A stretch of 64,000 nt of DNA from Obrimoposthia wandeli (lineage: Eukaryota): the NCBI GenBank assembly GCA_977020255.1, contig CDROCS010000122.1, positions 372,001-436,000 of the forward strand, in the 5' to 3' direction. The position numbers were made by a program, and so were the translations under genes. The notes under the pieces were generated by a model that worked only from the letters and a program-made list of their open reading frames with translations, was not told the DNA's origin and ran no database searches. This document shows positions 10,406 to 50,862 of the stretch, piece by piece. Position 1 is the first letter of the stretch; each line of letters opens with the position of its first letter.

Positions 10406-10539
10406 TACCCAGTTCCCTTTATAAACATGTCGACAGTGCAAGTTCAACTTGATTCATATCGTATCACCAGAGCAAAATACCCCAGATTATAAAGAGATAA
10501 TTATCGAGTGAATTCGAATATTAGAGGAAGGAGTAGTCA

Positions 10540-10920: not shown

Positions 10921-10946
10921 TATTACAATCTAATATGGCTGAAAAT

Positions 10947-10973
10947 AAAAAAGCCAGCTTGCGCTGGCTTCTT
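10947..10973. terminator. Bidirectional terminator between pilE and dnaJ
   Basis: aaaaaagccagc-ttgc-gctggcttctt between convergent genes. Confidence 0.75.
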
Positions 10974-10999
10974 AAATTCATTTAACTCAGCAATTAATA

Positions 11000-12142
11000 T
11001 TAGCCCGTTAAATCATCAAAAAATTTCTTCACACCATTGAAGAAACCTTCAGACTTTGGCTTATGCTTACTTGCTGCATTTCCCCCAAAGCTTTCTTCTA
11101 GCTCTTTAAGTAGCTCTTTTTGATGAGTACTTAAATTAATAGGGGTTTCAACAACGAGCTTACAAATCAAATCGCCAACCGCACCGCCGCGTACAGACTT
11201 AACGCCTTTACCACGCATACGGAACATACGTCCGGTTTGTGTTTCTGATGGTACTTTTAGATTTACGCGACCATTCAAAGTTGGTACTTCTACTTCACCA
11301 CCAACGGCAGCCATCGTAAAGCTAACAGGTACTTCGCAATATAGGTTGTTGCCATCACGTTCAAAAATTGAATGCTCTGCAACATGTACCTGTACATACA
11401 AATCACCAGCTGGTGCACCAAACTCGCCTGCTTCACCTTCGCCAGAAAGACGAATACGATCACCCGTATCAACACCCGCTGGGATCTTAACAGACAATGT
11501 TTTGGTTTTTTCAACTCGACCTTGACCATGACATGAATTACATGGGTCTTTAATGATCTTGCCGCGACCGTGACAATGTGGACAAGCTTGCTGTACAGCA
11601 AAGAAGCCTTGACGCATTTGTACTTGGCCTTGACCATGACAAGTGCCACACGTTGTTGCTGATGAACCTTTCTTGGCACCAGAACCGTCACACGAATCAC
11701 AACCAACCAATGTTGGTACACGGATTTCTTTAGAACAGCCGCGAACAGCTTCTTCTAATGTCAGTTCCATGTTGTAGCGAAGATCGGAACCGCGTTGAGC
11801 ACGCGACTGTTGACGTCGACCACCGCCGCCGCCACCGAAAATATCGCCAAATACATCACCGAAGATGTCACCGAAATCAGCGCCGCCGCCACCACCGTAG
11901 CCACCGCCGCCGCCACCTTGTTCAAAAGCTGCATGACCGTATTGATCGTATGCTGCTTTCTTTTGAGGATCGGTCAGAATTTCATACGCAGTTTTGACTT
12001 CTTTAAATTTATCAGAAGCATCTGCTTCCTGATTACGATCAGGGTGAAATTTCATTGCAAGGCGTTTATAAGCCTTTTTAATGTCACGTTCTCCGGCGTC
12101 TCGACCAACACCAAGAACTTCATAAAAATCGCGTTTTGACAT
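11000..12142 (-). CDS. dnaJ: Chaperone DnaJ
   Basis: J-domain with HPD, G/F region and four CxxCxGxG zinc-finger repeats. Confidence 0.98.
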
Positions 12143-12230
12143 ACTTAACTGTCACCTGCTTTAAATACAGCTACGGGCGATAGAGTAACCCCTAACGCCC
12201 GTTCGAAAATAAGATTATGAATTAACTATC

Positions 12231-14150: not shown

Positions 14151-14257
14151 CAGGCTTTCTCTCCGAAATTCATTTAATTTTACAAGCGCGTCCGAAATGA
14201 ACGTCGCTATATGGGGTATACCCAGACAAAATATGTTTACGATGTCGTATGATTACT

Positions 14258-14285
14258 AAATAAGGCCAATCATCCCCATTTCAAG
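14258..14285 (-). promoter_or_regulatory. Sigma32 heat-shock promoter of dnaK
   Basis: CTTGAAA-13 bp-CCTTATTT (consensus CTTGAAA-N13/14-CCCCATNT). Confidence 0.65.
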
Positions 14286-14316
14286 GGGCAACACCTAAAA
14301 AATATCAAAATAAAAT

Positions 14317-14342
14317 AAAAAACCCACCGTAGTGGGTCTTTT
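14317..14342 (-). terminator. Terminator after grpE
   Basis: Hairpin acccac/gtggg with a T-run on the minus strand. Confidence 0.55.
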
Positions 14343-14358
14343 TAAAGCATTTATACAA

Positions 14359-14979
14359 TTATGCTTGCATATCTACACTGCCAGCAGCAGCTTTAGATAC
14401 CATTACCATTGCAGGACGAATAATACGGCCATTTAGCTCATAACCTTTCTGCATAACAAGCATGACAGTATTTGGTTCATGCTCTGCACTTTCCTGAATA
14501 GACATTGCTTGATGGAATTCAGGGTTAAATGCTTCACCTACAGGGTTGTGCTGCTTCAGGCCGAATTTCTCAACAGTTGCCATCATTGTCTTAAGCGTTA
14601 GTTCAACACCTTCAATCATTGACTTCAATGCTTCGTCATTCTTATCGGCCATCTCGATAGCACGCTCAAGATTATCGATAACAGGCAATAACTCTTCGGT
14701 AAATTTATTCAATGCAAATTTACGTGCTTTATCGATTTCTACTTCTGAACGTCGGCGAACATTTTCACCTTCAGCGCGAGCACGAAGTACATTATCGTGC
14801 GCTTCTTTTACTTTTGCATCACTCGTAAGTAAAGCTGCTTCTAATTCAGCAATACGTGCGATTTGCATTTCTTCAGCAGTAACTTCTACAAATTCTTCCT
14901 CAGCAGAAACAGTCTCAGCCGCTTCTACAGTCTCTTGCTGCAGCTGTTCATCCTGTAGTTTTTTGTCTTCATTGTTCAT
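14359..14979 (-). CDS. grpE: Nucleotide exchange factor GrpE
   Basis: [33 protein letters not shown] and GRIIRPAMV motifs. Confidence 0.97.
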
Positions 14980-15084
14980 GCTTTTACTTCTCCGCCAAGA
15001 TACTGATGTATTTTAAATACAATTGTTCACAAATTTGAGTCGATAAACCAGTATTATCTGCTCAAAAAAACATTCATGTGCCTA

Positions 15085-15112
15085 TTATGGGGATGAACTT
15101 CAATGATTCAAG
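15085..15112 (-). promoter_or_regulatory. Sigma32 heat-shock promoter of grpE
   Basis: CTTGAA-14 bp-CCCCATAA, near consensus. Confidence 0.8.
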
Positions 15113-15191
15113 CAGAGTTCGCTAACAAAGCGCGACAAGTCTCTAAACCTAAGGCTATACTGGCTTCACTATCATTTGTCGGATCAAGGAC

Positions 15192-16073
15192 ATGAAGCGC
15201 ATTTTTCAAACAATCGCGTTAATTGGTAAGCCAAGAAACCCAGATGCTCTGCAAACTCACAAAACCCTCTTTGACTGGTTAACAAGCAAAGGTTACGACG
15301 TGTTAGTCGATCATCGATTAGCGAACGACCTTGATGTGCCTCATGACTGTTTGTGCGATTTGCTTACTATTGGTGATAAAGCGAACCTCGCGATTGTCGT
15401 CGGTGGCGATGGCAACATGTTAGGCGCGGCGCGCGTGCTATCGCGTTTCGACATCGCTGTGATTGGTGTTAACCGTGGTAATTTAGGTTTTCTGACCGAT
15501 CTTGCTCCAGAAAGCTTCAAAGAAGAACTAACCCGCGTATTAGAGGGTGAGTTTGTAACAGAACGTCGCTTTTTATTAGAAGCAGAAGTACATCGTCACG
15601 GACAAATAAAAAGCCGGAACGCCGCATTAAACGAAGCTGTATTACACCCAGATAAGATCGCTCACATGATCGAATTTGAAGTGTATATCGATGATAACTT
15701 CGCCTTCTCTCAACGTTCTGATGGTTTGATCATTGCAACCCCGACAGGCTCAACGGCCTATTCGCTGTCTGGTGGTGGTCCTATTCTGTCACCAAGTTTA
15801 AATGCGATTGCCTTAGTGCCGATGTTTCCACATACACTATCAAGTCGTCCTTTAGTGGTCGATGGTAATAGTTGTATCAAATTATTGGTGTCGCCAGACA
15901 ACGGCAGTACATTAGAAGTGAGTTGTGATGGGCAAGTTTCACTGCCTGTGAGCCCAGGGGATGAAGTGCATATCTATCAAAGCCCTGAGCAATTACAGCT
16001 TATCCACCCTAAGAATTATAACTACTACGGTGTACTCCGCGCCAAACTGAATTGGTCAAGTAAACTGTTTTAA
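15192..16073 (+). CDS. nadK: NAD kinase
   Basis: [15 protein letters not shown] and [14 protein letters not shown] motifs; conserved grpE-nadK-recN synteny. Confidence 0.97.
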
Positions 16074-29777: not shown

Positions 29778-30449
29778 TTACATATACGACTTTATTTTCA
29801 CTCTTAACGATTCACGCTTTATATATGGAAAGAGACCTGCCATAAAAGGCGATACTTGATCATGATGCTTTAAGATCATGACAGTAGCTGATAGTGCTTT
29901 TTCTGCGGATCCTTTCTTTTCAGTTAAAATGATACCTCTTAGGAACTCAATATCCTGATTTTCACCAACAATACTTAAAGCACTAATTGCTGACGATACT
30001 ATCTCTGCATCTTTGCTATCCAAGTACCTCAATGTGTACTCTCGAAGTTCAGCATTCGATATTTCATCGTAGCCAAACCATTTAGCTTGCCCAAGTAAAT
30101 AAACTAAGTTTAATTTAATTAGAGGCATATCTAATGTAATATTCTTATTTTTATTTATCCACATTTCATAAAAAACACTGAGTGATTCTTTTTTGTTTTC
30201 TTTACTCCCCCAGTAAAAATTTAGTTTGTTATTAAAATCATATATTAATTTCGAGCAAGCACCTTGTTCATAAAACTGTGATGTGTCTTTATATTGAGAG
30301 CAAAAAACCAAGTCAGGAACATTTACAAATAACTCATGAGACCCTTCCTTTGCGTACGAAGCTAATGATAAAAAAAAGGCCATACTAAGACTGAAGCTGG
30401 CATGCAGCTTACCATGTGATGCTAATTTTTTATTCACTTGCTTCACCAC
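29778..30449 (-). CDS. Hypothetical exported protein with HEAT-like C-terminus; probable orphan immunity protein
   Basis: AT-rich gene with a signal-peptide-like segment ending ASYA, helical repeats (IVSSAISALSIVG), and a position within the rhs orphan array; start uncertain. Confidence 0.55.
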   Translation of the reverse strand: MVKQVNKKLASHGKLHASFSLSMAFFLSLASYAKEGSHELFVNVPDLVFCSQYKDTSQFYEQGACSKLIYDFNNKLNFYWGSKENKKESLSVFYEMWINKNKNITLDMPLIKLNLVYLLGQAKWFGYDEISNAELREYTLRYLDSKDAEIVSSAISALSIVGENQDIEFLRGIILTEKKGSAEKALSATVMILKHHDQVSPFMAGLFPYIKRESLRVKIKSYM

Positions 30450-30487
30450 CCCCTTTTTTTATTATAAATAGTGTATCCCCTAGAATC

Positions 30488-30841
30488 CTAGCCACCTTTA
30501 TATTTAGCATGATTTATTGATGTCATAAATATTACCAACCCAGGAAGAAGGGCTAATAATTTAATAATAGGATGTTCATAATTTAAAAATAAGAAAAGAG
30601 AAATACAAAAAAGAAAAAGAGTTTTAAATGCAAATTTCCGCTCAGTGGTTAGCAACCTAATTATATGCTTTTGAGGTAAGCCTAAGATAGCGGCCAGACC
30701 AAAGAATATTATAATGACATAATGTTCAAAGTTTTGCTTAGCAATCAGGTCAATCAAACCAAGAAGGCATACATACCCTAACCCCCATGAACCTCCTTTT
30801 ATTTCAGGAGCAATAATTCTATTAGAGTCCTTGTCACTCAC
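30488..30841 (-). CDS. Small multi-pass membrane protein; probable immunity to the orphan Rhs toxin
   Basis: 117 aa with about four hydrophobic segments; start overlaps the orphan toxin stop; very AT-rich. Confidence 0.65.
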   Translation of the reverse strand: MSDKDSNRIIAPEIKGGSWGLGYVCLLGLIDLIAKQNFEHYVIIIFFGLAAILGLPQKHIIRLLTTERKFAFKTLFLFCISLFLFLNYEHPIIKLLALLPGLVIFMTSINHAKYKGG

Positions 30842-32229
30842 TATTTTTATCCTCTTTTACTGTTGTTTCATTACTCGCAGCTTCTCTGAACAAAAAAGAG
30901 CTTATTTGACCATATGCGTCAAACCCAAGTCTCGTTGGCATTTCATATTTTAAAGGTAAAGCACTCACAGCTTTTCCGCCTAAATAATATGAAGTCCCTG
31001 AATTAACAACACCAGCCGTAGCAGCTTCATTAATATCATCTCCCGCTGTTACATCTAAATAAACACTCGCTCCACCTAAAGATAAGCTAGACAGTTCTAA
31101 TGCTGTAGCTAAAGGAGTAAGCCCACTAATTAAAGCAATTGATGCTCCATGGCTAGAGTAAGTACTTAATTCTGATGTAACCATAACATAGTCAGCTTCT
31201 TGTAAATCTTTCGTATGGGTGTCGATATGATCTCTTAAACCTCCTCCCACATCGACAGAATCAAAGATATCAAGCCCTCGCTTAATTTTCTCCCACCAAT
31301 TTAATGAGCTATATGGTTTCTTCAATTCTATCTTCCCCTTCTTTACAGCTCAACCCCAATGGATCGATCCACTGGATTGGGTTTGGCGCATAGCGGTAGT
31401 GGTTTATTCCGCCTAATAAGCCTATTGGGGCTTGGTGAATAAACTGCCCGATACTTGGGTCGTAATAGCGAAAGCGGTTGTAGTGTAAACCCGATTCTTG
31501 ATCGTGATATTGCCCTTGGAAGCGCAGTGGGTTATGAATAATATCAACGCTAATAACCGCGCAACCCAACGCGTTGTAGGTGGCTTGCCATACAACGCCG
31601 CCTTCACTGTCGGTTACTGTGTGCGGTGTACCAAGGTGATCGGTGTGATAATAATAAAGTGTGCCATTATCAATCAAGGCTAAAGGGGTAAAATCATCAG
31701 GTGCATAAATATACCAACTGTACTGCCCTTGGCTATGCTCACCAATAAGTTGATCACCATCCCACAAGAAATCGACGGTATGCTGCTCGGTGGTTTTTCG
31801 GCTACGGCGACCGAGGGCATCGTAATCATAATGGCTATACCGACCATTATGGCTTAACTGCGTTAGTTACCAAGGCGCGGGTTACCAAAGCTGTCAAACT
31901 GATAATTTGTTGTTGTGTTGTTTTGGTGATGCGCTTGCAGCTGGTTTAGCGCATCGTAGCTAAACTGCTGGCGGCCTAAGGCGTTATCTTGTATCGCGAT
32001 AAGCTGGCTGGCTGAATCGTAGTGGTATTGTCGGCGATGGCTATTATCGTGTTCACTTATCCATTTTTGTTGTTGTAAACGGCCATGGCTATCGAAATTA
32101 CATTGCTGGGTAATACCATTCGCTTGGTGGCGTTTAAGCTCTCGGCCTAGCTTGTCTCTTTGAACCTTGAGTACATCGGCACCATTGAGTGTGATGGCAC
32201 TCAGTTGTTGCTGGCTACCGTATTGGTAA
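30834..32229 (-). pseudogene. Orphan Rhs module: core fragment plus frameshifted C-terminal toxin
   Basis: 31345-32229 matches the main rhs at about 33673-34702 with a 145-bp deletion; after DPLGL the frame stops at 31309 while the toxin frame (ORF 30834-31325) continues one base offset. Confidence 0.85.
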
Positions 32230-32434: not shown

Positions 32435-32770
32435 TTACTCGTTATTTAAACGTTCAATTTCATCAAATAACGCTTGATCCCATTCAAACTCCATATTGAA
32501 TTTACCTGTAGGTTCCAGTGTGAATTTGGCTCTATTCCATTTATTTTCTGAATTTTCAGTAGTGGTAGAATGAAGTTCTTTAAATAGTTTAAATAAGTTA
32601 TAACCACCGTTTAGATCAAGTAATTTCCCCTTAGTATTAATATATGTCACATCGAATTCGGCTGCATCTTCAAGAAATTCCACTTCGATTTTGCATTCTT
32701 TCCAGTTTTCATTTAGCTGACTGATTAGATGTTCAGCAATCCCCATGTATATTTCGTCAATAGTTTTCAA
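32435..32770 (-). CDS. DUF600/YezG-like immunity protein for the Rhs nuclease toxin
   Basis: Immediately after the rhs stop; IY..IAEHL...W...I and KWNRAKFTLEPTGKFNMEFEW match the DUF600 pattern. Confidence 0.8.
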   Translation of the reverse strand: MKTIDEIYMGIAEHLISQLNENWKECKIEVEFLEDAAEFDVTYINTKGKLLDLNGGYNLFKLFKELHSTTTENSENKWNRAKFTLEPTGKFNMEFEWDQALFDEIERLNNE

Positions 32771-32775
32771 TTGTT

Positions 32776-35700
32776 TTAACCCCCAGTTTGGTTTAATAGT
32801 GTGACCGATTTCTTTTTACCATCTATAAAGTATGTAACATCAAATGCTTCGGCTCTTTTTGAAGTACCATCATAAATGGCATTGATTTCAACTTCTACTT
32901 TTTTAGGTGGATCGCCTTTTAATGCTTTAGCCCATTTATTTTCCATACGCTTCCATGCGCCTTTATTTAAATTGCTATCCATTGCTGCATAATTTATTTG
33001 CTCACCCGGCCCTTTAAAGATTGAAGCAATTAAGTGCCCACCTTCATCTTCGGTTAAACCATCTTTGATACCGTGTGACTTCCCTGCTTTCGCTTGCTGA
33101 TAAGTGTTCCTATCTACTTTGGATAGATCAAGTTCTCCAGTCACTGATTTTACACGGCCTAAATCATCCGTTTTATAAGTGTAATTATCTACTTTATAAG
33201 TCGCATTCGGTTGAAGATCTTTATTCAGTGTTTTATTCCACCCGCCTTTTTTACCCGGATCAAGTTTAATCACAGGTTCTAAATCTTTGTATGTAGGTGT
33301 CACATTCCCTTTAACTAACGACCTCGGGTTAACCACCATCCCGATCGCTGCCATATTACTACCCATACCCTCCCAGTTACGACACTCCCAATTAACGACA
33401 GTATTTGCCTTCAGCTCTTGAGCTGCATCCAATGTATCGTTGATTCTTGCATCGGTTCTATCAACCGCATGGGTTGTAAAACCAAACGGGCGAGTCGCTA
33501 TATCAATGGGATAATATGCCGCATCAACCGTCGTGGATAATGCATCCCATGCGACAGTAAGCGGATCTGCATATATTGCTTCAGCCGTTCCTGTTACCGT
33601 ATCCCCAAAGTACTTAGTTACCCCTCCAACTAAGTAAGCTGAATTCAAGAGAAAATTATCTCCCCCCTCCTTACAACTCAACCCCAACGGATCGATCCAC
33701 TGAATTGGGTTTGGCGCATAACAGTAGTGGTTTATTCCGCCTAATAACCCTATTGGGTCTTGGTGAATAAACTGGCCGATACTTGGGTCGTAATAACGGA
33801 AGCGGTTGTAGTGTAAACCCGATTCTTGATCGTGATATTGCCCTTGGAAGCGCAGTGGGTTATGAATAATATCAACGCTAATAAACGCACAACCCAATGC
33901 GTCGTAGGTGGCTTGCCATACAACGCCGCCTTCACTGTCGGTTACTGTGTGCGGTGTGCCAAGGTGATCGGTGTGATAGTAATAAAGAGCACCATTATCA
34001 ATCAGGGCTAAAGGGGTAAAATCATTCGGTGCGTAAATATACCAACGGTACTGCCCTTGGCTATGCTCACCAATAAGCTGGTCGCCATCCCACAGGAAAT
34101 CGACGGTATGCTGTTCGGTGGTTTTTCGACTGCGGCGACCGAGGGCATCGTAATCATAATGGCTATACCGACCATTATGGCTTAACTGCGTTAGCTGGTT
34201 AAACCCATTGAATTGGCGATGTTGCGTTGAATCTTCATCACGAACCGTCGCTTGATTACCGCATTTATCGTAATCAAATATTTTTGACTGGTAGCGCTGT
34301 AGTCGATCGTTGGTCGATTCACTTTCTTCAAAATCAGGGTTACCAAGGCTCGGGTTACCAAAGCTGTCAAACTTATAATTTGTCGTGGTGTTGTTTTGGT
34401 GATGAGCTTGCAGTTGGTTTAGCGCATCGTAGCTAAACTGCTGGCGGCCTAAGGCGTTATCTTGTATTGCGATAAGCTGGCTGGCTGAATCATAGTGGTA
34501 TTGTCGGCGATGACTATTATCGTGTTCACTTGTCCATTTTTGTTGTTGTAAACGGCCATGGCTATCAAAATCACACTGTTGAGTTATACCATTCGCTTGG
34601 TGACGCTTAAGCTCTCGGCCTAGCTTGTCTCTTTGAACCTTGAATACATCGGCACCATTGAGTGTGATGGCGATCAACTGTTGCTGGCTATCGTATTGGT
34701 AACCTAGGGATTGACCATCAGGTAGAATTAATTGCGTACGGTTACCTTGCTCGTCATACGCATACTGAAGCTGCCATGCATCTTGCCACGTGGTGCTAAG
34801 TTGCTTACTGCCTTGCCACTCAAAACGTAACTTTCTTGCCGTGGTGTTGGCATTCAATAACCGCCCTATAACATCATAATCATACAGTTGGCTATCGCGC
34901 GCACCGCTTTCAGCGATGGTTTGCTTTTCTGTTATCCGCCCAGCGGTATCTCGTACTATATGAACCGTACGATCGCCTTCACGAACAGCAATTAATTGGC
35001 TATTCGCATCGTAAGCATAATGTTGATCTCGACCATCAAAACCAATGGTACGTGATACTCGCTCTTCTGCATCCCACTCTAATTGATAGTTACAGCCGTC
35101 ACTGCGCGTAATACCGGTAAGGTTACGTTCTTGGTCATATTGATATGCGACATAACTGCCATCTGGCTGTATGATCTTCTCTGGCTGAGAGAGCCCACCC
35201 CAAACAATTTGGCTAATACGGCCGATAGGATCGGTATGGCTAATCAGCCGGCCTGCATCATCATACGTATAAGACTGTTCAACCGCGGGCGTTTCATGAT
35301 CAGGATGATAGTGGCGAGTCTGCGCGATATTGCCGGCACTATCTCGCTGATATTCGATGATTGAGCCATCGGGATTGGCGACGCCATTTATCTCGCCATA
35401 GGCGTCATAACTATAGCGTGTTACGGCGTGATTTTGTTTAAACGCTGTCAGCAGCCCTTCTGCGTTCCACCAATAGCTATAACACTGGCCATCTGCGGCT
35501 ACGTGCTGAATTAATCGACCTTGATGGTCATATTCATAGTGGTCTTCAGTGCCTTCAGGATGCCGAGTTTCAAGCAACAACCCTAGGCTATTAAACCGGT
35601 GGGTGGTGATATGCCCAAGGGGTGAACATTGCTCGGTTAATTGACCAAAGCGGTTATAACAATATCGCGTTATCGCACCGTCTGGCGCATGTAATGCACA

Positions 35701-37155
35701 TAACAGCCCCTGAGCGTTATAGTCATAACGCGTTACTCTGCCATTGGGATCGATACCTGCTATTTTCAGACCTAGCTGATTATATTCATATCGCCAAGCC
35801 GCTCCCGCTGGGCTGATTTTTTTGACCAATAAGCCTTGTTCATTATGGTAGTAATGCCATTGATGCCCTCGGCTATCGGTGCTGATGGTCGAACTCGCGC
35901 TGTTATCATAATCAAACTGATACTGATAACAGTGATTATCGCCCCACTGCGCCCGACATTTTGCCATGCTACCGCCACCTAACCATTCAAAATAATGGCT
36001 GAAACCAGATGCTCGCTGGCGACAGGTAAGCAAGTGATCGTCGCGATATTGATAGTGTTCGGTCTGTTTATTTCGGTTTGTTGCCGCAACAAGCTGCCCG
36101 TCGGCATTATAGTGATAAGAGGCGATGACGTTAACGAGGCTGTCATCTTCTTTACTCGGCATTTCGACCGCGATTAAATGACCACTCGCATCATAGCGGA
36201 GTAGTAAACGCAGAAAGCCATTCGTTTCAATACCTATCATTCTTCCTGCGGAGGAATAACGAAAACCATATTGCGTCGTTTGATCGATTCGGAGTTTATC
36301 TAAGCGCCAGCCCTCGTAACGCCATGAAAATCTTAACTGCCTACCATCAGATAAACGTAATAAATAATAGCCTTTAGGATGATGGTATAAACTCGCCCCT
36401 GCGCGTAATTGATAACTCACCGCCCCTTTTGCAATAACATCGAAATAGAGGATGCAGCCTTCATTATCAATGAACCGCCATGTTTCTGGCTGATCTTCTG
36501 GTTCAAGTAAGACTAATTCATATTGATATTGGCTTCGCCAGCCATAGCCCATGCCTACGTCGAACTGACATTGGCCGGAGCGATACATTCTTCCCCATGT
36601 TATGAGCTGTGCGCCAGATAAAGAAGCATCGTCAATAGTCAGGATCTCTTCTCCTGAAACCATCGACACGGGATCACCACAAAATTCAGTTTCTTTAATC
36701 GCGACAGCGGGCGTATCAACGCGGATTTGATCTTCGTTTGGGGTTATCGGTGCTTCTGCTCCCCCTTTGGGCAATGCTGTTCCAGATGAAACAATTGGCG
36801 GTACACTGGGTAATTCGGTGTGGATGATTACGGGCTTGGTTTCAGGAATAGCGCGGCAATGCAGTATGCCTCGTTGCAAGGCTGTGCCTAAAAATTGAAG
36901 TACTTCGCTTTTATGTGACTCGGGTTGTAAACGGGCACGACTTGAAAGTCGAGAATCCACCAAATCGACAACCGCTAAGAGATCACGACTGGCTATGCCA
37001 ATGTACAAATGCTCGAACATCTTCACCAGATTATAAGCGTGTGTTGTGTGGTTAAACGTTTGCACGCCTTCACTACTCGCACTCAGTTTTTCATTCGTAA
37101 ACTGATAGACTAACCCATCATTCGCTTTCAGTTTAACGCTACGACTTACCCCCAT
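32776..37155 (-). CDS. PAAR-less Rhs effector with Endonuclease_NS_2 C-terminal toxin
   Basis: CGDPVSMVSGEE (DUF6531), YD repeats, NPLRFQGQY...RYYDP...QDPIG...DPLGL core end, then a nuclease domain with DEGGHLIASIFKG...NLN. Confidence 0.93.
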   Translation of the reverse strand: MGVSRSVKLKANDGLVYQFTNEKLSASSEGVQTFNHTTHAYNLVKMFEHLYIGIASRDLLAVVDLVDSRLSSRARLQPESHKSEVLQFLGTALQRGILHCRAIPETKPVIIHTELPSVPPIVSSGTALPKGGAEAPITPNEDQIRVDTPAVAIKETEFCGDPVSMVSGEEILTIDDASLSGAQLITWGRMYRSGQCQFDVGMGYGWRSQYQYELVLLEPEDQPETWRFIDNEGCILYFDVIAKGAVSYQLRAGASLYHHPKGYYLLRLSDGRQLRFSWRYEGWRLDKLRIDQTTQYGFRYSSAGRMIGIETNGFLRLLLRYDASGHLIAVEMPSKEDDSLVNVIASYHYNADGQLVAATNRNKQTEHYQYRDDHLLTCRQRASGFSHYFEWLGGGSMAKCRAQWGDNHCYQYQFDYDNSASSTISTDSRGHQWHYYHNEQGLLVKKISPAGAAWRYEYNQLGLKIAGIDPNGRVTRYDYNAQGLLCALHAPDGAITRYCYNRFGQLTEQCSPLGHITTHRFNSLGLLLETRHPEGTEDHYEYDHQGRLIQHVAADGQCYSYWWNAEGLLTAFKQNHAVTRYSYDAYGEINGVANPDGSIIEYQRDSAGNIAQTRHYHPDHETPAVEQSYTYDDAGRLISHTDPIGRISQIVWGGLSQPEKIIQPDGSYVAYQYDQERNLTGITRSDGCNYQLEWDAEERVSRTIGFDGRDQHYAYDANSQLIAVREGDRTVHIVRDTAGRITEKQTIAESGARDSQLYDYDVIGRLLNANTTARKLRFEWQGSKQLSTTWQDAWQLQYAYDEQGNRTQLILPDGQSLGYQYDSQQQLIAITLNGADVFKVQRDKLGRELKRHQANGITQQCDFDSHGRLQQQKWTSEHDNSHRRQYHYDSASQLIAIQDNALGRQQFSYDALNQLQAHHQNNTTTNYKFDSFGNPSLGNPDFEESESTNDRLQRYQSKIFDYDKCGNQATVRDEDSTQHRQFNGFNQLTQLSHNGRYSHYDYDALGRRSRKTTEQHTVDFLWDGDQLIGEHSQGQYRWYIYAPNDFTPLALIDNGALYYYHTDHLGTPHTVTDSEGGVVWQATYDALGCAFISVDIIHNPLRFQGQYHDQESGLHYNRFRYYDPSIGQFIHQDPIGLLGGINHYCYAPNPIQWIDPLGLSCKEGGDNFLLNSAYLVGGVTKYFGDTVTGTAEAIYADPLTVAWDALSTTVDAAYYPIDIATRPFGFTTHAVDRTDARINDTLDAAQELKANTVVNWECRNWEGMGSNMAAIGMVVNPRSLVKGNVTPTYKDLEPVIKLDPGKKGGWNKTLNKDLQPNATYKVDNYTYKTDDLGRVKSVTGELDLSKVDRNTYQQAKAGKSHGIKDGLTEDEGGHLIASIFKGPGEQINYAAMDSNLNKGAWKRMENKWAKALKGDPPKKVEVEINAIYDGTSKRAEAFDVTYFIDGKKKSVTLLNQTGG

Positions 37156-38117
37156 AATGCGTTATCACTCTGCTTTTCATGCCAACCAAACATTGCAGCA
37201 CTTCGATATAACCCATCGGCAATATCTAAATGAAAAACACCCTCGGTGATGCTAACAAGTTTCTGCTGATACATCTTTTGTGTATGCAGTACATTCAGCA
37301 AGCCACTGGTGCAACCTACATCGCCAATACGAATACCATTAAAGAAACATTGCAAATTAATTGAGAATTTTTCAGCGAGTATCTGCATGCCTTGTACCCA
37401 CTCATTCGTCATTGGAATCGAATTGTTGGTCGGTAACTGCATCGCCTGAATAGGCAACCCACATTGTTGGATGTATTGATGAAATAGATTTGAAACCGCA
37501 GATCCTGTTGCATTCGCTTCTGCTTGGGCCGCATAGCTCTGCCAATGTGTTACTAATCCTGTGCTAGCCTGAGTCACTCGAACAATGGCAGCACTGTCAC
37601 AGGCTACAACCGAAACATCATTAAATGCTTTTTTGGGGAAATCGACCTCTGCCTGCTTACTACAAAATCGACTATTGGCATCAATAGCAATCACTAATAC
37701 ACTGGTAAATGTGCCCTTATAAAGGAGTGCCTCTATACGCTTTAGCGCTAATAAAAAAGCGGCTCGTCCATAGGGGTATAAATACAAGTTATCATGCTCA
37801 GATAAGGCCGGTAATACATCACAATAATGAGAAAATACATGTGATGAAGAATGCACATGGTCTGCTGAAAAAGCAGGAAGCAGAACAACCATAGGCACTT
37901 GCTGCCAATCCTTAGGAAGCTTGACGACAACATCTTTAAATAATTGTTGAACTCGCTCTGAATAGCTATCACTAAAACGGTTGTACCGAGCAAGTGCTCG
38001 ACCAGTAAAAGCGGGAGATTCGATCCATATCGGATCCAATGGTTCATCACTTAATAAACATTTTCTCAGATCGACGTCACCAGCATGCAATGCTAAAGAT
38101 TCAAAAAACAATGGCAT
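37146..38117 (-). CDS. Ketosynthase/thiolase-fold T6SS accessory protein (PRK06147-like), putative adaptor
   Basis: YPYGRAAFLLAL, VIAID, DSAA and IGDVGCTSG motifs; tightly packed between PAAR and rhs. Confidence 0.6.
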   Translation of the reverse strand: MPLFFESLALHAGDVDLRKCLLSDEPLDPIWIESPAFTGRALARYNRFSDSYSERVQQLFKDVVVKLPKDWQQVPMVVLLPAFSADHVHSSSHVFSHYCDVLPALSEHDNLYLYPYGRAAFLLALKRIEALLYKGTFTSVLVIAIDANSRFCSKQAEVDFPKKAFNDVSVVACDSAAIVRVTQASTGLVTHWQSYAAQAEANATGSAVSNLFHQYIQQCGLPIQAMQLPTNNSIPMTNEWVQGMQILAEKFSINLQCFFNGIRIGDVGCTSGLLNVLHTQKMYQQKLVSITEGVFHLDIADGLYRSAAMFGWHEKQSDNALWG

Positions 38118-38123
38118 AATCAA

Positions 38124-38414
38124 TTAACCAATTAATACATTGGCAATTCCTGCCACTATTTTTCCACCGTGTGATGAGCTATCACCCATGCGTGCTGCAG
38201 GTTTGCCATTGATAAAGACACTGCCCGAACCGGCAGATACACTATCAGGGGGGCCACCATAACAGACCATTTGATCACCTTGTTTCGCGGCAGGTAAACC
38301 TCCGATAAATACGTTACCTGAGCCCGCAACAATCGGCCCACCGCAATGCGGTGTTTTACCTGAATATTGAGGGCATACATGATGCGAACTAAGTACCGCT
38401 GCTGGCTTACCCAT
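38124..38414 (-). CDS. Stand-alone PAAR spike-tip protein
   Basis: Three PAAR motifs (KPAAV, LPAAK, KPAAR) with His/Cys zinc ligands; 96 aa with no extension. Confidence 0.93.
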   Translation of the reverse strand: MGKPAAVLSSHHVCPQYSGKTPHCGGPIVAGSGNVFIGGLPAAKQGDQMVCYGGPPDSVSAGSGSVFINGKPAARMGDSSSHGGKIVAGIANVLIG

Positions 38415-38452: not shown

Positions 38453-40309
38453 TTAGTTAAGCGCAATGTTCCCAGCTTTAAGGGTAATTGCCTGACCATT
38501 AATATTTATATTTGACCCTCTAATACTAATGTCACCACCACTTGACATAGTGATTGATGCCGAGCCCGTTTTTAAAACAATTTCTTGGCCGGCTTCAATC
38601 ACTATTTTCTGACCCGCCTTACAGATTTGATCATTTTTCACATCAATATTTTGATTATTATTCACGACAATATTTTGGTTATTTTCAACCGTAATAGTGC
38701 GATCATTTTTTACTGATAATTGATGATTATTTTCAACTACTTCAAGGTGATCATTTTCAACAATAACGCAATGATCTTTTTCTGCATGAAACGCTAGTTT
38801 TTCACTGCCTTTAGTATCATCAAATCGTATTTCACTATAGTTGCTCCCCCTGCCATCAAGAGAACGGGTTTTAATACCACTAATAGCACCTTGGCTATAT
38901 GGCGGTACCTGACTCGCATTGTAAAGAGAACCACAAATAATCGGCTGTTCTGGATCGCCATTAATAAAGTCGATGAGAACTTCCTGACCAACTCTAGGGG
39001 TAAAGAAACTGCCCCAACCTGCACCTGCCCATACTTGAGCAACTCGAATCCAACATGAACTAAATTCATTATTTTGACCATCACGATCCCAGTGAAACTT
39101 CACTTTCACGCGGCCAAGCTGATCAAGGTAAACTTCTTCCCCCTCTTTGCCTGATACCGTCGCCGTCTGCACACCATACACCTTGGGTTTTGTCACAATA
39201 TTGTGGGGACGATACGCAACAGTATTGGGTACACAGCTAAATTGGTTATGAATAATTTGGTGAGTATTTTTGAGAGCCCCTGTTTGAGACTGTATAGATA
39301 CATGTAGATGTAATTGCGTAACAACATAACTTTTGCCAATTTGAGCAGGATCTTCGTGATCAACAAAAGTAAATGTTTTACCTGCAGAAAATGAACGACA
39401 GTTACTAGAACCACTACATGCAAAAGTATCGCGCTGTAATGCTTCTAGAATATTACCTGCACTAAAATTGACTCTGGGATTAAAACCCGACTCTCCTTGA
39501 TATTGATAAAGCTCACTTTCAGGCGGGTTGATACCTTGAGCATAATGACTATGCATCGCAGAAGGCGGGTTCATTGGGTTCTGTAAATCAAAACCAGATA
39601 TAGCGCTTTGTCCTGCTGACAACTGTAGCCCTGTCGTCCAATGGTGAACATGAGGATCATTACATGATCCCGTCACATGACGAACATTCCCATCTTCACA
39701 TTCCACATAAGCATCAACGGAGTCAGCTATAATTAGCTGGTGGTTATCTTGGCTGTGTTCAAAGAAGAAAAATACCCCTTCATCCTGAAGAAGACGAAGT
39801 ACAAAATCTAAATCAGATTCATGATACTGAACTTTATAACCATATATTGGATAGGTTTTACTTCTATCATCCCTAAATGAAATACCATGACGTCCAAGCA
39901 CATCACCTAAAATTTCTTCTACGTTTTTATCTTGATAAATTTTATAATGACATTTAAAACTAGCCAAATAAAATTCGGGTCTGATCGTTAAAATATAATC
40001 TTGGTAAAGCTCACTCTCTGCTTTATCTGGCATTCGGCTGCCGACACAGTCAACCTGTGCAACAATGCCATTAAAATAACGCGTTAATAGCTGCTTTCCA
40101 ATATTATATTTAAGTGCGATAGATACATTAGAACCAATCAACCCTTCACGATTAATGGATATTCCATTCGCAAAAGCCTGAGCTTTTAATGAAAACAAAC
40201 CTGACATTTCTTCATTATAATCAAAGCCCGTCAGGATTAATGCATCTTTCCCTAAGGGCGTTGATAATATGATACAGTTATTATCTTGTGTCGCGTCTTT
40301 CATTTTCAC
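38453..40309 (-). CDS. vgrG: T6SS spike VgrG (TssI) with no evolved toxin domain
   Basis: VQYHESDLDFVLRLLQDEG, GRVKVKFHWD and SCWIRVAQ...PRVGQEV motifs, followed by gp5-like beta repeats. Confidence 0.96.
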   Translation of the reverse strand: MKMKDATQDNNCIILSTPLGKDALILTGFDYNEEMSGLFSLKAQAFANGISINREGLIGSNVSIALKYNIGKQLLTRYFNGIVAQVDCVGSRMPDKAESELYQDYILTIRPEFYLASFKCHYKIYQDKNVEEILGDVLGRHGISFRDDRSKTYPIYGYKVQYHESDLDFVLRLLQDEGVFFFFEHSQDNHQLIIADSVDAYVECEDGNVRHVTGSCNDPHVHHWTTGLQLSAGQSAISGFDLQNPMNPPSAMHSHYAQGINPPESELYQYQGESGFNPRVNFSAGNILEALQRDTFACSGSSNCRSFSAGKTFTFVDHEDPAQIGKSYVVTQLHLHVSIQSQTGALKNTHQIIHNQFSCVPNTVAYRPHNIVTKPKVYGVQTATVSGKEGEEVYLDQLGRVKVKFHWDRDGQNNEFSSCWIRVAQVWAGAGWGSFFTPRVGQEVLIDFINGDPEQPIICGSLYNASQVPPYSQGAISGIKTRSLDGRGSNYSEIRFDDTKGSEKLAFHAEKDHCVIVENDHLEVVENNHQLSVKNDRTITVENNQNIVVNNNQNIDVKNDQICKAGQKIVIEAGQEIVLKTGSASITMSSGGDISIRGSNININGQAITLKAGNIALN

Positions 40310-40361: not shown

Positions 40362-40841
40362 TTATTTTTTCTGACCAGTAACGCCGCTATAACCCCAAAC
40401 AACTTTAGGTTCAAGGTTATTATCATCATCGGTAGGTGTTACCGTCATTACCATTTCAGTGTAAGAAATGGTAATAGTTTCAGTTGGACGATCATCATTA
40501 ACAACGACGTTAAAATTAGCAATCATTGCATCTGTTAGTTCAAGCTTAAGAATTTCTTCAACTTTATCACCTTGTCTGGTCACATAAAACTGAATATCTG
40601 TTCCTTTACCAATGGTTGCTTCTTTAAATAAATACGTTGAAGCTTTGTCTTGAAGCTTAGTGATGGTCATATCATGAAGACGTGTAGAACTCGCTTCACG
40701 ATCTTGTGCAGTACCTGTGAATGAAGTAATTTCACGACCGACTCCCCAATCAACAGAGAGCAGTGTAATCATCCCTTCATAATCTTTAGCTGTAGTTTCA
40801 CCCTTAATATCACCATATTTCAGGTAAGTATTAGCTTGCAT
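40362..40841 (-). CDS. hcp: T6SS tube protein Hcp (TssD)
   Basis: 159 aa with IKGE, ITK..DKAS and E.I.I.Y motifs; located between clpV and vgrG. Confidence 0.93.
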   Translation of the reverse strand: MQANTYLKYGDIKGETTAKDYEGMITLLSVDWGVGREITSFTGTAQDREASSTRLHDMTITKLQDKASTYLFKEATIGKGTDIQFYVTRQGDKVEEILKLELTDAMIANFNVVVNDDRPTETITISYTEMVMTVTPTDDDNNLEPKVVWGYSGVTGQKK

Positions 40842-47769: not shown

Positions 47770-49311
47770 TTATCCATTACGATTTAATATTGGTGACAAT
47801 TCGGTTATTAATCTTATGTTTGATATCATCTGATCCAGTTGAAAATGTGGCCGCAAATGAACCACAGAATAATAGTGGCCTGATTTCCCAACTGTTTCTT
47901 TTACCTGAATTCTGGCCTCGCTCAATGGAAATCTTGCTCTTATCTCATCAGATACTTCTTCGGTCGATGTGGTATATGAATGCAACCATCGCTGAAAGTA
48001 ATTTTCTATTTGTTCTGCACTCTCAAAACTACCGATGCGATCTCGCCCCATAACTTTTATATAATGAGCAAATCTTGATACACACAATATATATTGAAGC
48101 ATCGACGCTAAACGTGCATTTATTGTATCTGAATTCGATGTGTATTTTTTAGGTTCATTCACTGACGCATTACTATAAAACGATAAGAATTCAGTTTCTG
48201 AAACAGATGCTACGGGTATGAAACCATTATCTGCTAATTGTTTTTCAAGCTTATCACCGACTTGTAAATTAACTGACATCTTATTTTTTGTTAATCGACG
48301 AGTAACGCAAAAATGACTCTGAGGTACCTTTACAACCAAACCTTGTCGATACTTGCCAGACTGTATGCCTCGTATATGCGAAAACCAGCCAGACTCACAG
48401 TAGGCCCGTATTGTGACTGCGGCAAAACTATATGCCGCATTCCCCCAAAGGTAGTCTATATCTGTAAACTGATTAGATTCTTTAAATAAGAAACATTCTC
48501 GCCGTGAACCATCCGGTTCATAAGGTGAGCGCAAAAGAATATCGGGTAAAGTAATACCTAAAAACTTAGCATCTTCCATCTTTCTTAAATTTTGCCAATT
48601 AATATATTCTAGCTGCTCAAAATGACTATCAATATTATTAATCGATGCTAATTCAGAAAAAGCATCAACGCCTAAAAAGCTAGGATCAGCCGAAGTAATA
48701 AATGGTGCAAACGCAGCCGCAGCCGTTTGCATCACTATTCTTAAGGTGTCAATATCATTTGTAGTGATGTTTTTCTGAACTTGGTGTGTGATTTTATAAT
48801 CACCAATTAACAAACCAAAAGGTTCACCACCTGCAATATTAAATTCATTGTTATAAATAATCCGAAAAAACTCACCTTGATCAAAATCGATGGCCTTTGC
48901 ACAATCACGACTTAATTCCTGCCACGTTAGATGAAGTAATTTTATTTTACACTTCTGGTCTGTATCATATTCATGTTCTTGCTCAGCTAAATACTTTAAC
49001 CCTAACCAACTGGCTTCTAATTTTTTAAATGAAGCATGGTGTAAAATTTCATTAACCTGACTATTTACCTTTTCATCAATAGACGAAATTGCAGATAATA
49101 TTAAAGATATCAATTCACTCTTATTGGTATTTTTAATATTGACTACATCATGAATATCAAGCCACATTTTAAGAGCAAGATCTTCATCATCAGTATCAAG
49201 AAAGCTATCCACTAATTGACTTTCAGCATAACAATTATACCGTTCAGAAAGTGCCAGTTTGCTATGTGTTAAATCTTGTTCTGATATAAAAGAGAGTGTA
49301 TTTATTGACAC
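47770..49311 (-). CDS. tssC: Second, divergent T6SS sheath large subunit TssC
   Basis: ILHHASFKKLEASW, GGEPFG, YLWGNA and SRFAHYIKVMGRDRIGS motifs; GTG start. Confidence 0.88.
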   Translation of the reverse strand: MSINTLSFISEQDLTHSKLALSERYNCYAESQLVDSFLDTDDEDLALKMWLDIHDVVNIKNTNKSELISLILSAISSIDEKVNSQVNEILHHASFKKLEASWLGLKYLAEQEHEYDTDQKCKIKLLHLTWQELSRDCAKAIDFDQGEFFRIIYNNEFNIAGGEPFGLLIGDYKITHQVQKNITTNDIDTLRIVMQTAAAAFAPFITSADPSFLGVDAFSELASINNIDSHFEQLEYINWQNLRKMEDAKFLGITLPDILLRSPYEPDGSRRECFLFKESNQFTDIDYLWGNAAYSFAAVTIRAYCESGWFSHIRGIQSGKYRQGLVVKVPQSHFCVTRRLTKNKMSVNLQVGDKLEKQLADNGFIPVASVSETEFLSFYSNASVNEPKKYTSNSDTINARLASMLQYILCVSRFAHYIKVMGRDRIGSFESAEQIENYFQRWLHSYTTSTEEVSDEIRARFPLSEARIQVKETVGKSGHYYSVVHLRPHFQLDQMISNIRLITELSPILNRNG

Positions 49312-49371: not shown

Positions 49372-50862
49372 TTAACTAATTTCAGGTATTTTTGCGACAA
49401 GACGCAATGAAGTGGTCAGCTCTTCCATTTGTAACCAAGGACGTAACCAAGCAACCGCATGATAAGCACCTGGCTGGCCAGGAATTTCTTGTACTTTTAC
49501 TTTTGCGTCAGCCAGTGGATATTTCGCGCGAATTTCTTGCCCTGCATCTTCAGTTGCATTGACATAAGATAAAATCCAACGGTTTAACCAGCGTTCCACA
49601 TCATCCGCTTCCATGAAACTACCAATTTTGTCACGTGCCATTACTTTCAAATAATGGGCAAAACGTGATGTTGCCATCATATACGGTAAACGCGCCGAAA
49701 TTTCTGCATTTGCCGATGCTTCTGGCGTGTCATATTTAGTTGGCTTTTGACATGTTTGGCCGCCAAAGAACACTGCATAGTTAGTATTTTTATAATGACA
49801 TAACGGTAAAAAACCCAGTCTACCTAGTTCCGACTCACGGCGATCGGTAATGCCAATTTCAGTCGGACATTTCAAATCTGGGTCACCATCGTCACTCATA
49901 AATACATGAGCCGGTAGGTTATCAACTTTGCCTCCTCCTTCAGCCCCGCGAATCGCAGTACAAAAGCCGTATTTAGCGAACGCAGCCGTCATCTTCGCGC
50001 CCATCACATACGAGGCATTCATCCAACAATAATCATCATGCTTGGCGTTAACGGCTAAACCACTTTCATCATCAATCATAAACTCTTCGTAGCGGAATTC
50101 TTCAATTGGCAACGTCGTTTGGCCATAAGGTAAACGCGACAATACTCGTGGCATTGTTAAGGTGACAAAACGTGAGTCAGGGCTTTCACGGAATGAACGC
50201 CATTGTGTATATTCAAGCGACTCAAACACTTTATCTAAATCTCTTGGTTTGCTTAACTCTTCCCACTCATCAAAACCAAATAGTTCAGGTGAAGCCGCAG
50301 ATAAGAAGGGAGAAAAACCAGCCGCTGCAACATTTGACATTAAGCCGAGCATTTCAATATCTTCCGGATGATTAGTAAACTCATAATCACCAATTAATGC
50401 ACCGTATGGTTCTCCACCTGGTGTACCAAATTCAGCCTCATAAACCTTTTTAAAAATCTGGCTTTGATCAAATTCAACGGCCTTACTTAAATCTTTATGT
50501 AGCTCTTTTTTACTCAGACTCAACATCCGAATTTTCAATGTTTGTCCAGTATCCGAGTTCATTGCAAGATAGTGCAGCCCACGCCAACTGCCTTCAAGTT
50601 TCTGAAACTCAGGTTGGTGCATGATCTCGGCAAGTTGTGATGAAATCGCATCATCAATCCCATTAATGGCATCATTAAAGGTCACTGTTAGGTTTTTATT
50701 CCAAGTCACCGTTCCCTTTAGCGCTTCTTCCGTTAACGTACGTAACAATTCTTCAGCACGAGAACTATCTGTTTGCTTAGTGGCAACAATGGCTTGATCA
50801 AGAAAAGATCGACGGGTTTCTGCTGTTGCAGGATCGAGTAATACCTCTGTTTGTGCGTTCAT
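49372..50862 (-). CDS. tssC: T6SS sheath large subunit TssC (VipB)
   Basis: [22 protein letters not shown] and [17 protein letters not shown] motifs. Confidence 0.96.

What the first reader, a model, noticed from the sequence alone, without database searches (positions are those of the whole stretch)
37146..38414. Ketosynthase-fold protein between a stand-alone PAAR and a PAAR-less Rhs: candidate new effector-loading module
PAAR stop (38124), this gene (ATG 38117) and the rhs start (10-nt overlap) are tightly coupled. The protein carries condensing-enzyme-fold motifs (GRAA where the catalytic Cys loop would be, and GDVGCTSG), like the PRK06147 family. That family is normally described alongside DUF2169 and DUF4150-type PAAR effectors. 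No DUF2169, EagR/DUF1795 or DUF4123 adaptor is recognisable in this cluster. The simplest model is that a catalytically dead fatty-acid-synthase fold has been repurposed as the sole chaperone docking a PAAR-less Rhs onto a canonical PAAR tip.
Basis: partly seen in the sequence, partly recalled or inferred. Interest (0 to 1): 0.72.

Follow-up and report, generated by a model that had tools for sequence, protein, structure and literature searches.

The report
Dead ketosynthase-fold accessory for T6SS Rhs
A small protein with the shape of a fatty-acid-building enzyme but without its catalytic residues sits between the spike-tip gene and a large Rhs toxin gene of a Photobacterium type VI secretion system; it is a divergent, unnamed relative of an already proposed "thiolase-like" secretion helper and most likely helps load the toxin onto the spike.

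Summary
On the minus strand, PAAR (38414-38124), gene X (ATG 38117 to 37146, 323 aa) and an Rhs gene (ATG 37155, 10-nt overlap) are tightly packed behind Hcp and VgrG, at the end of a complete T6SS cluster of a Photobacterium profundum/frigidiphilum-type genome.

X belongs to a small unnamed family: 62 clusters among 1.84 billion representatives, with no Pfam or NCBIfam model. The family is remotely homologous (hhalign 96.6%) to a protein in the PRK06147/TvpD slot of a VgrG-DUF6484-DUF2169-X'-PAAR-like effector cluster.

Its context differs from that slot. X is followed in 9 of 9 loci by a PAAR-less Rhs with an unnamed ~105-aa N-domain and a disordered linker. A canonical PAAR is nearby in 7 of 9 loci. 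DUF2169 was never seen beside it.

Most relatives outside Photobacterium carry a second unnamed partner (Y) that this window lacks.

Thiolase-like T6SS helpers are already proposed in the literature, so this is a new variant of a known kind. The loading mechanism is inferred, not shown.

The parts
40362..40841 (-). Hcp (TssD), 159 aa
   Evidence: PF05638 E 4e-31
38453..40309 (-). VgrG (TssI), 618 aa. It has no C-terminal effector domain, only a ~35-aa tail after the gp5 trimer domain.
   Evidence: TIGR03361 E 1e-168; Phage_GPD, Phage_base_V and Gp5_trimer_C
38124..38414 (-). Stand-alone canonical PAAR, 96 aa
   Evidence: PF05488 E 6.4e-25. Tox-PAAR-like (DUF4150) reaches only 18.8 bits, below its 31-bit cutoff.
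37146..38117 (-). X: 323-aa pseudo-ketosynthase (thiolase fold, catalytic triad absent). A divergent TvpD/PRK06147-like T6SS accessory protein.
36841..37155 (-). Rhs N-terminal domain (aa 1-105): a small alpha/beta domain with no name and no PDB fold match. It is the candidate docking or chaperone-binding module.
36682..36840 (-). Rhs disordered linker rich in Pro, Ser, Thr and Ala (aa ~106-158)
   Evidence: pLDDT below 50; low-complexity and variable in length in all 9 homologous Rhs proteins.
32776..36681 (-). Rhs cage (DUF6531 plug, RHS/YD repeats, RHS core) and C-terminal Endonuclea_NS_2 toxin (aa 1316-1445 = 32821-33210)
   Evidence: Pfam: RHS_repeat E 4e-62, DUF6531 E 5e-14, RHS E 1.5e-12, Endonuclea_NS_2 E 1e-37
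32435..32770 (-). Cognate immunity protein, YezG-like, 111 aa
   Evidence: PF04634 E 4e-9

Best explanation
X is a catalytically dead ketosynthase-fold protein that serves the type VI secretion system as an effector-specific accessory (chaperone/adaptor) for the Rhs toxin encoded directly downstream.

Shown:
- X has the thiolase/ketosynthase fold and lacks the Cys-His-His/Asn triad. Arg118 replaces the nucleophile, and Asp266 sits in the C-terminal Gly loop, where the family has Asp or Glu.
- X belongs to a small unnamed family that is remotely homologous to the 'thiolase-like' PRK06147/TvpD slot protein of DUF2169-type spike clusters.
- Across relatives, X is invariably followed, usually with overlapping or abutting reading frames, by a PAAR-less Rhs. 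That Rhs begins with a ~105-aa folded domain and a disordered linker.

Inferred:
- X binds this N-terminal domain, the linker or both, and keeps the 160-kDa Rhs competent for loading.
- X helps attach the Rhs to the VgrG-PAAR spike before firing and stays behind in the producer, as Tap/Tec (DUF4123), Eag (DUF1795) and TvpA/TvpD proteins are thought to do.
- In the Photobacterium branch X does this alone. In most other branches it acts together with a second unnamed protein, Y.
For: Fold.

Loss of catalytic residues, family-wide: with the FabH register (FabH Cys aligns with R118).

Homology to the TvpD-slot protein: P0068/P0072 lies in L007 as VgrG-DUF6484-DUF2169-P0072-Tox-PAAR-like/GHH2. The family profile hits it at E 8e-7. 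hhalign gives 96.6%, E 6e-10, over 232 columns, with shared 'P[YH]GR' and 'IG[DE]xGA' motifs.

Synteny: X is followed by a DUF6531-first Rhs in the window, L001, L002, L004/5, L006, L008, L009, L010 and L011. Hcp-VgrG-PAAR lies upstream in most.

Coupling: a 6-nt PAAR-X spacer and a 10-nt X-Rhs overlap.

Divergence: X (46% identity) and the Rhs N-domain (49%) are the fastest-diverging parts between the window and P. jeanii. VgrG is 73%, ClpV 75% and the Rhs core 59%. This fits a co-evolving specificity pair.

No other known adaptor is present in the cluster.

Literature: PRK06147 is a candidate adaptor (PMC7714669). In P. mirabilis, transposon hits in every gene of a thiolase-like-containing cluster abolish killing (cited in PMC11883445). 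TvpD is predicted to be a co-chaperone (bioRxiv 10.64898/2026.02.23.707444).
Against: - No interaction, secretion or killing data exist for this family. All functional statements rest on gene order and on analogy.
- In the characterised relatives, the thiolase-like protein is predicted to shield a DUF4150/PIPY PAAR-like domain together with DUF2169. It is not predicted to bind an Rhs N-domain, and here neither DUF4150 nor DUF2169 is present.
- The divergence-rate argument rests on a single species pair.
- Complex prediction could not be run with the tools on hand.
- The link to PRK06147 rests on one protein cluster (P0068) and on profile methods, not on the CDD model itself.
Confidence: 0.6

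Rival explanations
1. X is a PAAR co-chaperone in the strict TvpD sense. It shields the stand-alone PAAR (not the Rhs) in a pre-complex until the PAAR is placed on VgrG. The Rhs would be recruited independently through its own N-domain.
For: X is remotely homologous to the TvpD-slot protein. TvpD is modelled as covering the PAAR-like domain of Tse7 (bioRxiv 10.64898/2026.02.23.707444). A canonical ~96-aa PAAR lies just upstream of X or of Y-X in 7 of 9 informative loci, with a 6-nt spacer in the window.
Against: P. jeanii (L001) and L012 keep VgrG-(Y)-X but have no PAAR in the locus, and L001 also keeps the Rhs. Canonical PAAR proteins bind VgrG without a chaperone, unlike DUF4150/PIPY domains (PMC11883445). 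The PAAR here is PF05488, not DUF4150.
Confidence: 0.17
2. X is a general structural or assembly factor of this T6SS, like the Acinetobacter pseudo-ketoacyl synthase TsmK that stabilises the membrane complex. It would not be an effector-specific helper.
For: TsmK shows that a dead ketosynthase fold can be co-opted for T6SS assembly (PMC10564176). X lies in the main T6SS cluster.
Against: TsmK is tied to TssJ-less Acinetobacter systems and is encoded among membrane-complex genes. This cluster has TssJ, TssL and TssM. X always travels with the Rhs at the variable VgrG end of the cluster. Sequence homology to TsmK could not be tested because no TsmK sequence was on hand.
Confidence: 0.07
3. X is an active condensing or acyl-transfer enzyme that modifies the Rhs, the PAAR or a lipid. 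For example, it might acylate the spike or make a small molecule.
For: X has the thiolase fold. A few family members have Cys at position 118 or 119 (2 and 6 of 52).
Against: The nucleophile position is Arg, Ser or Ala in most members. Both His/Asn positions are replaced family-wide: P229 in one, and Asp or Glu at 266 in the other. No ACP, acyltransferase or CoA-ligase gene is present in any of the loci. Pfam ketosynthase models do not reach threshold (best ACP_syn_III E 0.012).
Confidence: 0.03

Closest known systems
PRK06147 / 'thiolase-like' T6SS accessory, TvpD (P. aeruginosa PA0098; the P. mirabilis pef cluster homologue)
   Same: Both have the ketosynthase/thiolase fold. Both are about 300-380 aa. 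Both are encoded in the variable VgrG-distal part of T6SS clusters, immediately upstream of the effector gene. X shares the 'P-[YH]-G-R' motif at the lost-cysteine position and the 'G-[DE]-x-G-A' loop with the one TvpD-slot protein compared, P0068. The family profile matches that protein remotely but significantly.
   Different: No DUF2169 (TvpA) or DUF6484 (TvpC-like) partner is present. The PAAR is canonical PF05488 and stand-alone, not a DUF4150/PIPY domain fused to the effector. The effector is a PAAR-less Rhs with an unnamed N-domain. Pairwise sequence identity is in the noise (BLASTP E 1e-4 over 40 residues). Many relatives have a different unnamed partner, Y, instead of DUF2169.
TsmK (AsaB), the Acinetobacter pseudo-ketoacyl synthase of the T6SS membrane complex (PMC10564176)
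   Same: It is a ketosynthase fold co-opted by a T6SS, with loss of catalytic residues.
   Different: TsmK is a membrane-complex assembly factor of TssJ-less systems and is encoded among the core genes. X is encoded between PAAR and Rhs in a TssJ-containing system. Sequence relatedness was not tested.
DUF4123 adaptors (Tap-1/TEC) and the TecT/co-TecT chaperone pair with PAAR4-TseT (cited in PMC11883445 and PMC11925235; the TecT/co-TecT details are from my own knowledge)
   Same: By analogy only, these are dedicated cytoplasmic helpers encoded just upstream of a PAAR-less effector that load it onto VgrG or PAAR. The two-protein version (PAAR-Y-X-Rhs) resembles the order PAAR4, chaperone, co-chaperone, effector.
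   Different: The fold and sequence are unrelated. There is no Pfam DUF4123 or DUF2875 hit in the cluster.
FabH/KAS III, OleA, and PKS ketosynthases and chain-length factors
   Different: There is no Cys-His-His/Asn triad. X is shorter than KAS I/II-type domains (323 aa against about 410). Sequence identity is 7-16%. There is no fatty-acid or polyketide gene context.

Membership tests
Thiolase-like / ketosynthase fold superfamily | Duplicated alpha-beta-alpha-beta-alpha core that superposes on condensing enzymes | tested here: met
   [not shown]
Thiolase-like / ketosynthase fold superfamily | Catalytic Cys at the N-terminus of the active-site helix, plus His-His or His-Asn | tested here: not met
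   R118 aligns with the FabH Cys. Position 118 is R/S/A in 45/52 members and Cys in 2/52. The loops equivalent to 'EAHGTG' and 'GHxxGAAG' read 'LPxNG' and 'G[ED]LGAxxG', with no His or Asn. The register was inferred from the profile alignment and helix boundaries, not from a residue-level structural superposition.
PRK06147 / TvpD thiolase-like T6SS accessory | Significant match to the CDD PRK06147 (cl30694) model or InterPro IPR040771 | not testable with these tools
   Neither model is in the libraries on hand. Pfam and NCBIfam give no family hit above threshold.
PRK06147 / TvpD thiolase-like T6SS accessory | Homology to a protein occupying the slot between DUF2169 and a PAAR-like effector | tested here: met
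   P0072/P0068 in L007 lies as VgrG-DUF6484-DUF2169-P0072-Tox-PAAR-like/GHH2. The A2 profile hits it at E 8e-7. hhalign gives 96.6%, E 6e-10, 232 columns. Only one such cluster was tested.
PRK06147 / TvpD thiolase-like T6SS accessory | Adjacent DUF2169 (TvpA) partner (74% of PRK06147 genes; defining for Tvp class II) | tested here: not met
   There is no PF09937 hit in the Pfam-scanned ORFs of >=110 aa between 25949 and 62234, nor in L004, L008, L009, L010 or L012. The unnamed partner Y is not DUF2169-like. The rest of the genome was not searchable.
PRK06147 / TvpD thiolase-like T6SS accessory | Cognate effector carries a DUF4150/PIPY PAAR-like domain | tested here: not met
   The Rhs has no PAAR or PAAR-like domain, and its N-domain is alpha/beta with no PAAR fold. 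The separate PAAR is PF05488; Tox-PAAR-like is below its cutoff.
TsmK (Acinetobacter pseudo-ketoacyl synthase) | Encoded among the membrane-complex genes of a TssJ-less T6SS and co-occurring with GS-linker TssM | tested here: not met
   TssJ (PF12790, E 3e-37) is present, and X lies between PAAR and Rhs. Sequence homology to TsmK was not tested.
Named T6SS adaptors DUF4123, DUF1795 (Eag) and DUF2169 | Pfam domain match | tested here: not met
   X and 51 relatives were scanned against Pfam at E <= 0.1, and none of these domains was hit.

The most novel reading that the evidence does not exclude
The X family is a self-standing adaptor class, distinct from the DUF2169-dependent TvpD. On this reading, a pseudo-ketosynthase recognises a previously unnamed ~105-aa N-terminal 'loading' domain on PAAR-less Rhs toxins and bridges it to a canonical VgrG-PAAR spike. 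It would act alone in Photobacterium and with the unnamed partner Y elsewhere. That would define both a new adaptor and a new effector marker domain, which could be used to find cargo.
Probability: 0.35. Interest if true: 0.6.

Novelty: new variant of a known kind. Interest (0 to 1): 0.5.

Why it matters
How PAAR-less Rhs toxins are attached to the T6SS spike is known for only a few adaptor families. Thiolase-like accessory proteins have been flagged since 2020 but never characterised biochemically. So far they have been discussed almost only as companions of DUF2169 and PIPY-type tips.

This locus shows a divergent branch of that fold working in a different setting, with a canonical PAAR, no DUF2169 and an Rhs cargo. 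In Photobacterium it occurs in a minimal form: one helper, one PAAR, one VgrG, one Rhs. That makes it a clean system for asking what the dead ketosynthase fold actually binds.

The work also points to two unnamed conserved pieces that could serve as search handles for new cargo: the Rhs N-domain and the partner protein Y. None of this changes the general picture of T6SS loading. It extends a known theme.

Tried and rejected
- Direct sequence routes for X were uninformative. These were Pfam and NCBIfam, phmmer against the PDB and the word-seeded protein search (2 hits). Only the exhaustive profile search and the fold gave answers.
- I tested whether Y, the partner seen in relatives, is a hidden DUF2169 or a second thiolase-fold subunit (a KS/CLF-like heterodimer). 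hhalign rejected both, at 0.06% and 1%. Y has no PDB sequence match.
- I tested whether the HEAT_2-like 223-aa ORF (29778-30449) is the counterpart of the HEAT/armadillo protein that ends PA0095-PA0101-type clusters. It is not conserved in P. jeanii, where the equivalent position holds a GAD-like/Tdi1 immunity protein. I rejected it as part of the module.
- A wider locus survey failed. The family alignments have no stretch conserved enough for the search for related loci, and the genome scan with the three Photobacterium sequences returned only P. jeanii.
- No RNA runs hold the locus, so expression and co-transcription were not examined and read laying was not used.
- The supplementary tables of PMC7714669 are not held. 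I could not check whether Photobacterium proteins were already counted as PRK06147 homologues.
Full report
**1. What is in the sequence**

All genes discussed lie on the minus strand. The window carries a complete type VI secretion cluster running from about 62234 down to 40362. It contains Fha, TssJ, TssK, TssL (with an OmpA domain), TssM, TagF, a PP2C phosphatase, TssA, TssB, two TssC paralogues, TagJ/ImpE, TssE, TssF, TssG, ClpV and Hcp.

The cluster continues with these genes:
- VgrG, 40309-38453 (TIGR03361, E 1e-168).
- A 96-aa canonical PAAR, 38414-38124 (PF05488, E 6e-25).
- Gene X.
- A 1459-aa Rhs, 37155-32776.
- A YezG-like immunity gene, 32770-32435.

The PAAR stop TAA ends at 38124. 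The X ATG is at 38117, six bases later; the TTG at 38123 listed by the ORF finder is not used, because homologues start MPLFF. The X stop TAA is at 37148-37146, and the Rhs ATG at 37155 lies inside ATGGGGGTAA, a 10-nt overlap.

The closest database proteins are hypothetical proteins of Photobacterium frigidiphilum (95% identity) and, in the same 90% cluster, P. profundum SS9 PBPRA0677.

**2. What X is**

Sequence libraries do not name X. Pfam gives only a sub-threshold ACP_syn_III hit (E 0.021, 15 bits against a 24-bit cutoff), and NCBIfam gives nothing relevant.

An exhaustive profile search of 1.84 billion representative proteins found only 62 clusters at E <= 1e-3, nearly all between 280 and 390 aa. 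X therefore belongs to a small family. None of 52 members scanned reaches a Pfam threshold.

With a 52-sequence alignment, AlphaFold2 gives a confident model (mean pLDDT 91.9, pTM 0.91). Two structure searches agree on the fold:
- Foldseek against the PDB returns only thiolase-fold condensing enzymes at the top (FabH, OleA, PqsD, AbyA1, a KS/chain-length factor) at E about 1e-11 and probability 1.00.

The fold claim is therefore solid.

**3. X is a pseudoenzyme**

The family profile aligns weakly but consistently with FabH around the active-site helix. In that register, and counting from the conserved helix end (FabH C112...KSG against X R118...YKG), the FabH cysteine corresponds to Arg118 in 'YPYGRAA'.

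Across 52 family members:
- G117 is invariant.
- Position 118 is Arg in 28, Ser in 11, Ala in 6 and Cys in only 2.
- Position 119 is Cys in 6.
- The other histidine loop reads 'LP-x-N-G'.

No triad residue is conserved. Instead the family conserves W240, D146, E/D174, Q296, Y304 and W312.

The residue equivalences come from profile alignment and helix boundaries. No residue-level structural superposition was available to me.

**4. Relation to the known 'thiolase-like' T6SS proteins**

The literature already knows a thiolase-like T6SS accessory:
- PRK06147 was proposed as a fourth adaptor class from gene neighbourhoods. There were 407 homologues, 74% of them next to DUF2169. [quoted passage not shown]
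- It is the 'thiolase-like' gene of DUF2169 synteny type A. In P. mirabilis, transposon insertions in every gene of that cluster abolish killing (PMC11883445).
- A 2026 preprint names P. aeruginosa PA0098 TvpD. It predicts that TvpD and the DUF2169 protein TvpA form a groove protecting the PAAR-like domain of Tse7 (bioRxiv 10.64898/2026.02.23.707444).

I could not score X against the CDD model. However, the profile of the X family detects a protein cluster (P0068/P0072, E 8e-7) that IMG-oxoacyl-ACP synthase. On contig L007 that protein sits exactly in the TvpD slot: VgrG, DUF6484, DUF2169, P0072, then a Tox-PAAR-like/Tox-GHH2 effector. hhalign between the X family and P0068 gives 96.6% probability, E 6e-10, over 232 columns. 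The two share 'P-H-G-R' at the lost-cysteine position and 'IGESGA' at the C-terminal loop.

X is therefore a remote relative of TvpD/PRK06147-type proteins, not an independent recruitment of the fold. A second T6SS pseudo-ketosynthase, Acinetobacter TsmK, acts in membrane-complex assembly of TssJ-less systems (PMC10564176). Its context does not fit this cluster.

**5. The context differs from the known one**

I recovered neighbourhoods for twelve relatives.

- **Rhs downstream.** In every case where the downstream gene is visible (9 of 9: window, L001, L002, L004/5, L006, L008, L009, L010, L011), X is directly followed by an Rhs protein. Each Rhs starts with a divergent ~105-aa domain, then a 40-60-aa Ser/Thr/Pro/Ala-rich linker, then the 'GDPVSMxSGEEIL' start of DUF6531. 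None has a PAAR domain. Their toxin domains vary: Endonuclea_NS_2 here, Ntox46 and TNT elsewhere.
- **PAAR upstream.** A canonical 95-98-aa PAAR lies upstream in 7 of 9 informative loci. It is missing from the locus in P. jeanii (VgrG, a 110-bp gap, X, Rhs; no PAAR motif in 21 kb) and in L012 (VgrG, a 350-aa protein, X').
- **Named adaptors.** None of the loci with recorded Pfam hits has DUF2169, DUF6484, DUF4123 or DUF1795.
- **Partner Y.** Most relatives outside Photobacterium have a second unnamed protein, Y (347-467 aa), between PAAR and X, with overlapping stop and start codons (L002, L004/5, L008, L009, L010). Y has no Pfam or PDB match. It is neither DUF2169-like nor thiolase-like by hhalign. 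The window, L006 and the P0004 contig lack Y.

**6. The Rhs N-terminus**

Between the window and P. jeanii, X (46% identity) and this N-domain (49%) are the most diverged parts of the locus. VgrG is 73% identical, ClpV 75%, the Rhs cage 59% and the toxin end 86%. That is what a specificity pair would show, but it is a single comparison.

**7. Most likely mechanism**

Shown: the fold, the loss of catalysis, remote TvpD homology, and invariant linkage to a PAAR-less Rhs with a conserved N-terminal layout.

Inferred: X is a cytoplasmic chaperone/adaptor that binds the Rhs N-domain, the linker or both. It presents the Rhs to the VgrG-PAAR spike and is not secreted. I put about 0.6 on this.

The main rival (about 0.17) is that X keeps the ancestral TvpD role and handles the PAAR rather than the Rhs. 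The PAAR-free loci argue against it, as does the published observation that canonical PAARs need no chaperone (PMC11883445). A TsmK-like general assembly role (0.07) and a true enzymatic role (0.03) are unlikely.

**8. Novelty and verdict**

The idea that a dead fatty-acid-synthase fold serves T6SS loading is not new.

What appears undescribed in the literature I could search is this particular branch:
- it has no family model;
- it is uncoupled from DUF2169 and PIPY;
- it is coupled to a canonical PAAR and to PAAR-less Rhs proteins bearing an unnamed N-domain;
- it often has an unnamed partner Y;
- in Photobacterium it is reduced to a single helper.

I classify it as a new variant of a known kind, of moderate interest and readily testable in P. 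profundum SS9.

**Limits**
- No complex prediction was possible.
- No RNA data hold the locus.
- The survey covers a dozen loci.
- The PRK06147 link rests on one bridging protein cluster.
- The rest of the source genome could not be searched for a distant DUF2169 or Y gene.

Noticed in passing
L004:6760-8001, L002:2887-4290, L008:8925-10016, L009:7059-8102, L010:2-1099: An unnamed protein family 'Y' (347-467 aa) is translationally coupled upstream of X in most relatives outside Photobacterium. It has no Pfam or PDB sequence match and is neither DUF2169-like nor thiolase-like. It is probably a co-chaperone. It is absent from the window.
   Followed up: partly
[not shown]
   Followed up: partly
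L001 (Photobacterium jeanii) 8035-15364; L012 2105-6137: The orthologous P. jeanii locus has VgrG, X and Rhs but no PAAR gene anywhere in 21 kb. L012 likewise goes VgrG, a 350-aa protein, then X'. The PAAR is therefore dispensable as a neighbour.
   Followed up: partly
window 47770-49311 and 49372-50862 (-): Two tandem full-length TssC/VipB sheath paralogues (513 and 496 aa) lie in one T6SS cluster.
   Followed up: no
window 29778-31767 (-): Downstream of the immunity gene lie an orphan Rhs-core fragment (152 aa, PF03527), then 163-aa and 117-aa ORFs without any family, and a 223-aa ORF with a sub-threshold HEAT_2 hit. This is probably a displaced toxin tip with immunity genes. The HEAT-like ORF is not conserved in P. 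jeanii.
   Followed up: partly
window 32776-33700 vs L001 14400-15364: The Rhs C-terminal region (linker plus Endonuclea_NS_2 toxin) is 86% identical between the window and P. jeanii, whereas the cage is only 59% identical. This suggests recent exchange or strong constraint on the toxin end.
   Followed up: no
L004:5930-6283: An unnamed 117-aa ORF lies between VgrG and PAAR in the L004/L005 relatives, with no Pfam hit. Whether it is a short TvpC-like (DUF6484-type) piece was not tested.
   Followed up: no
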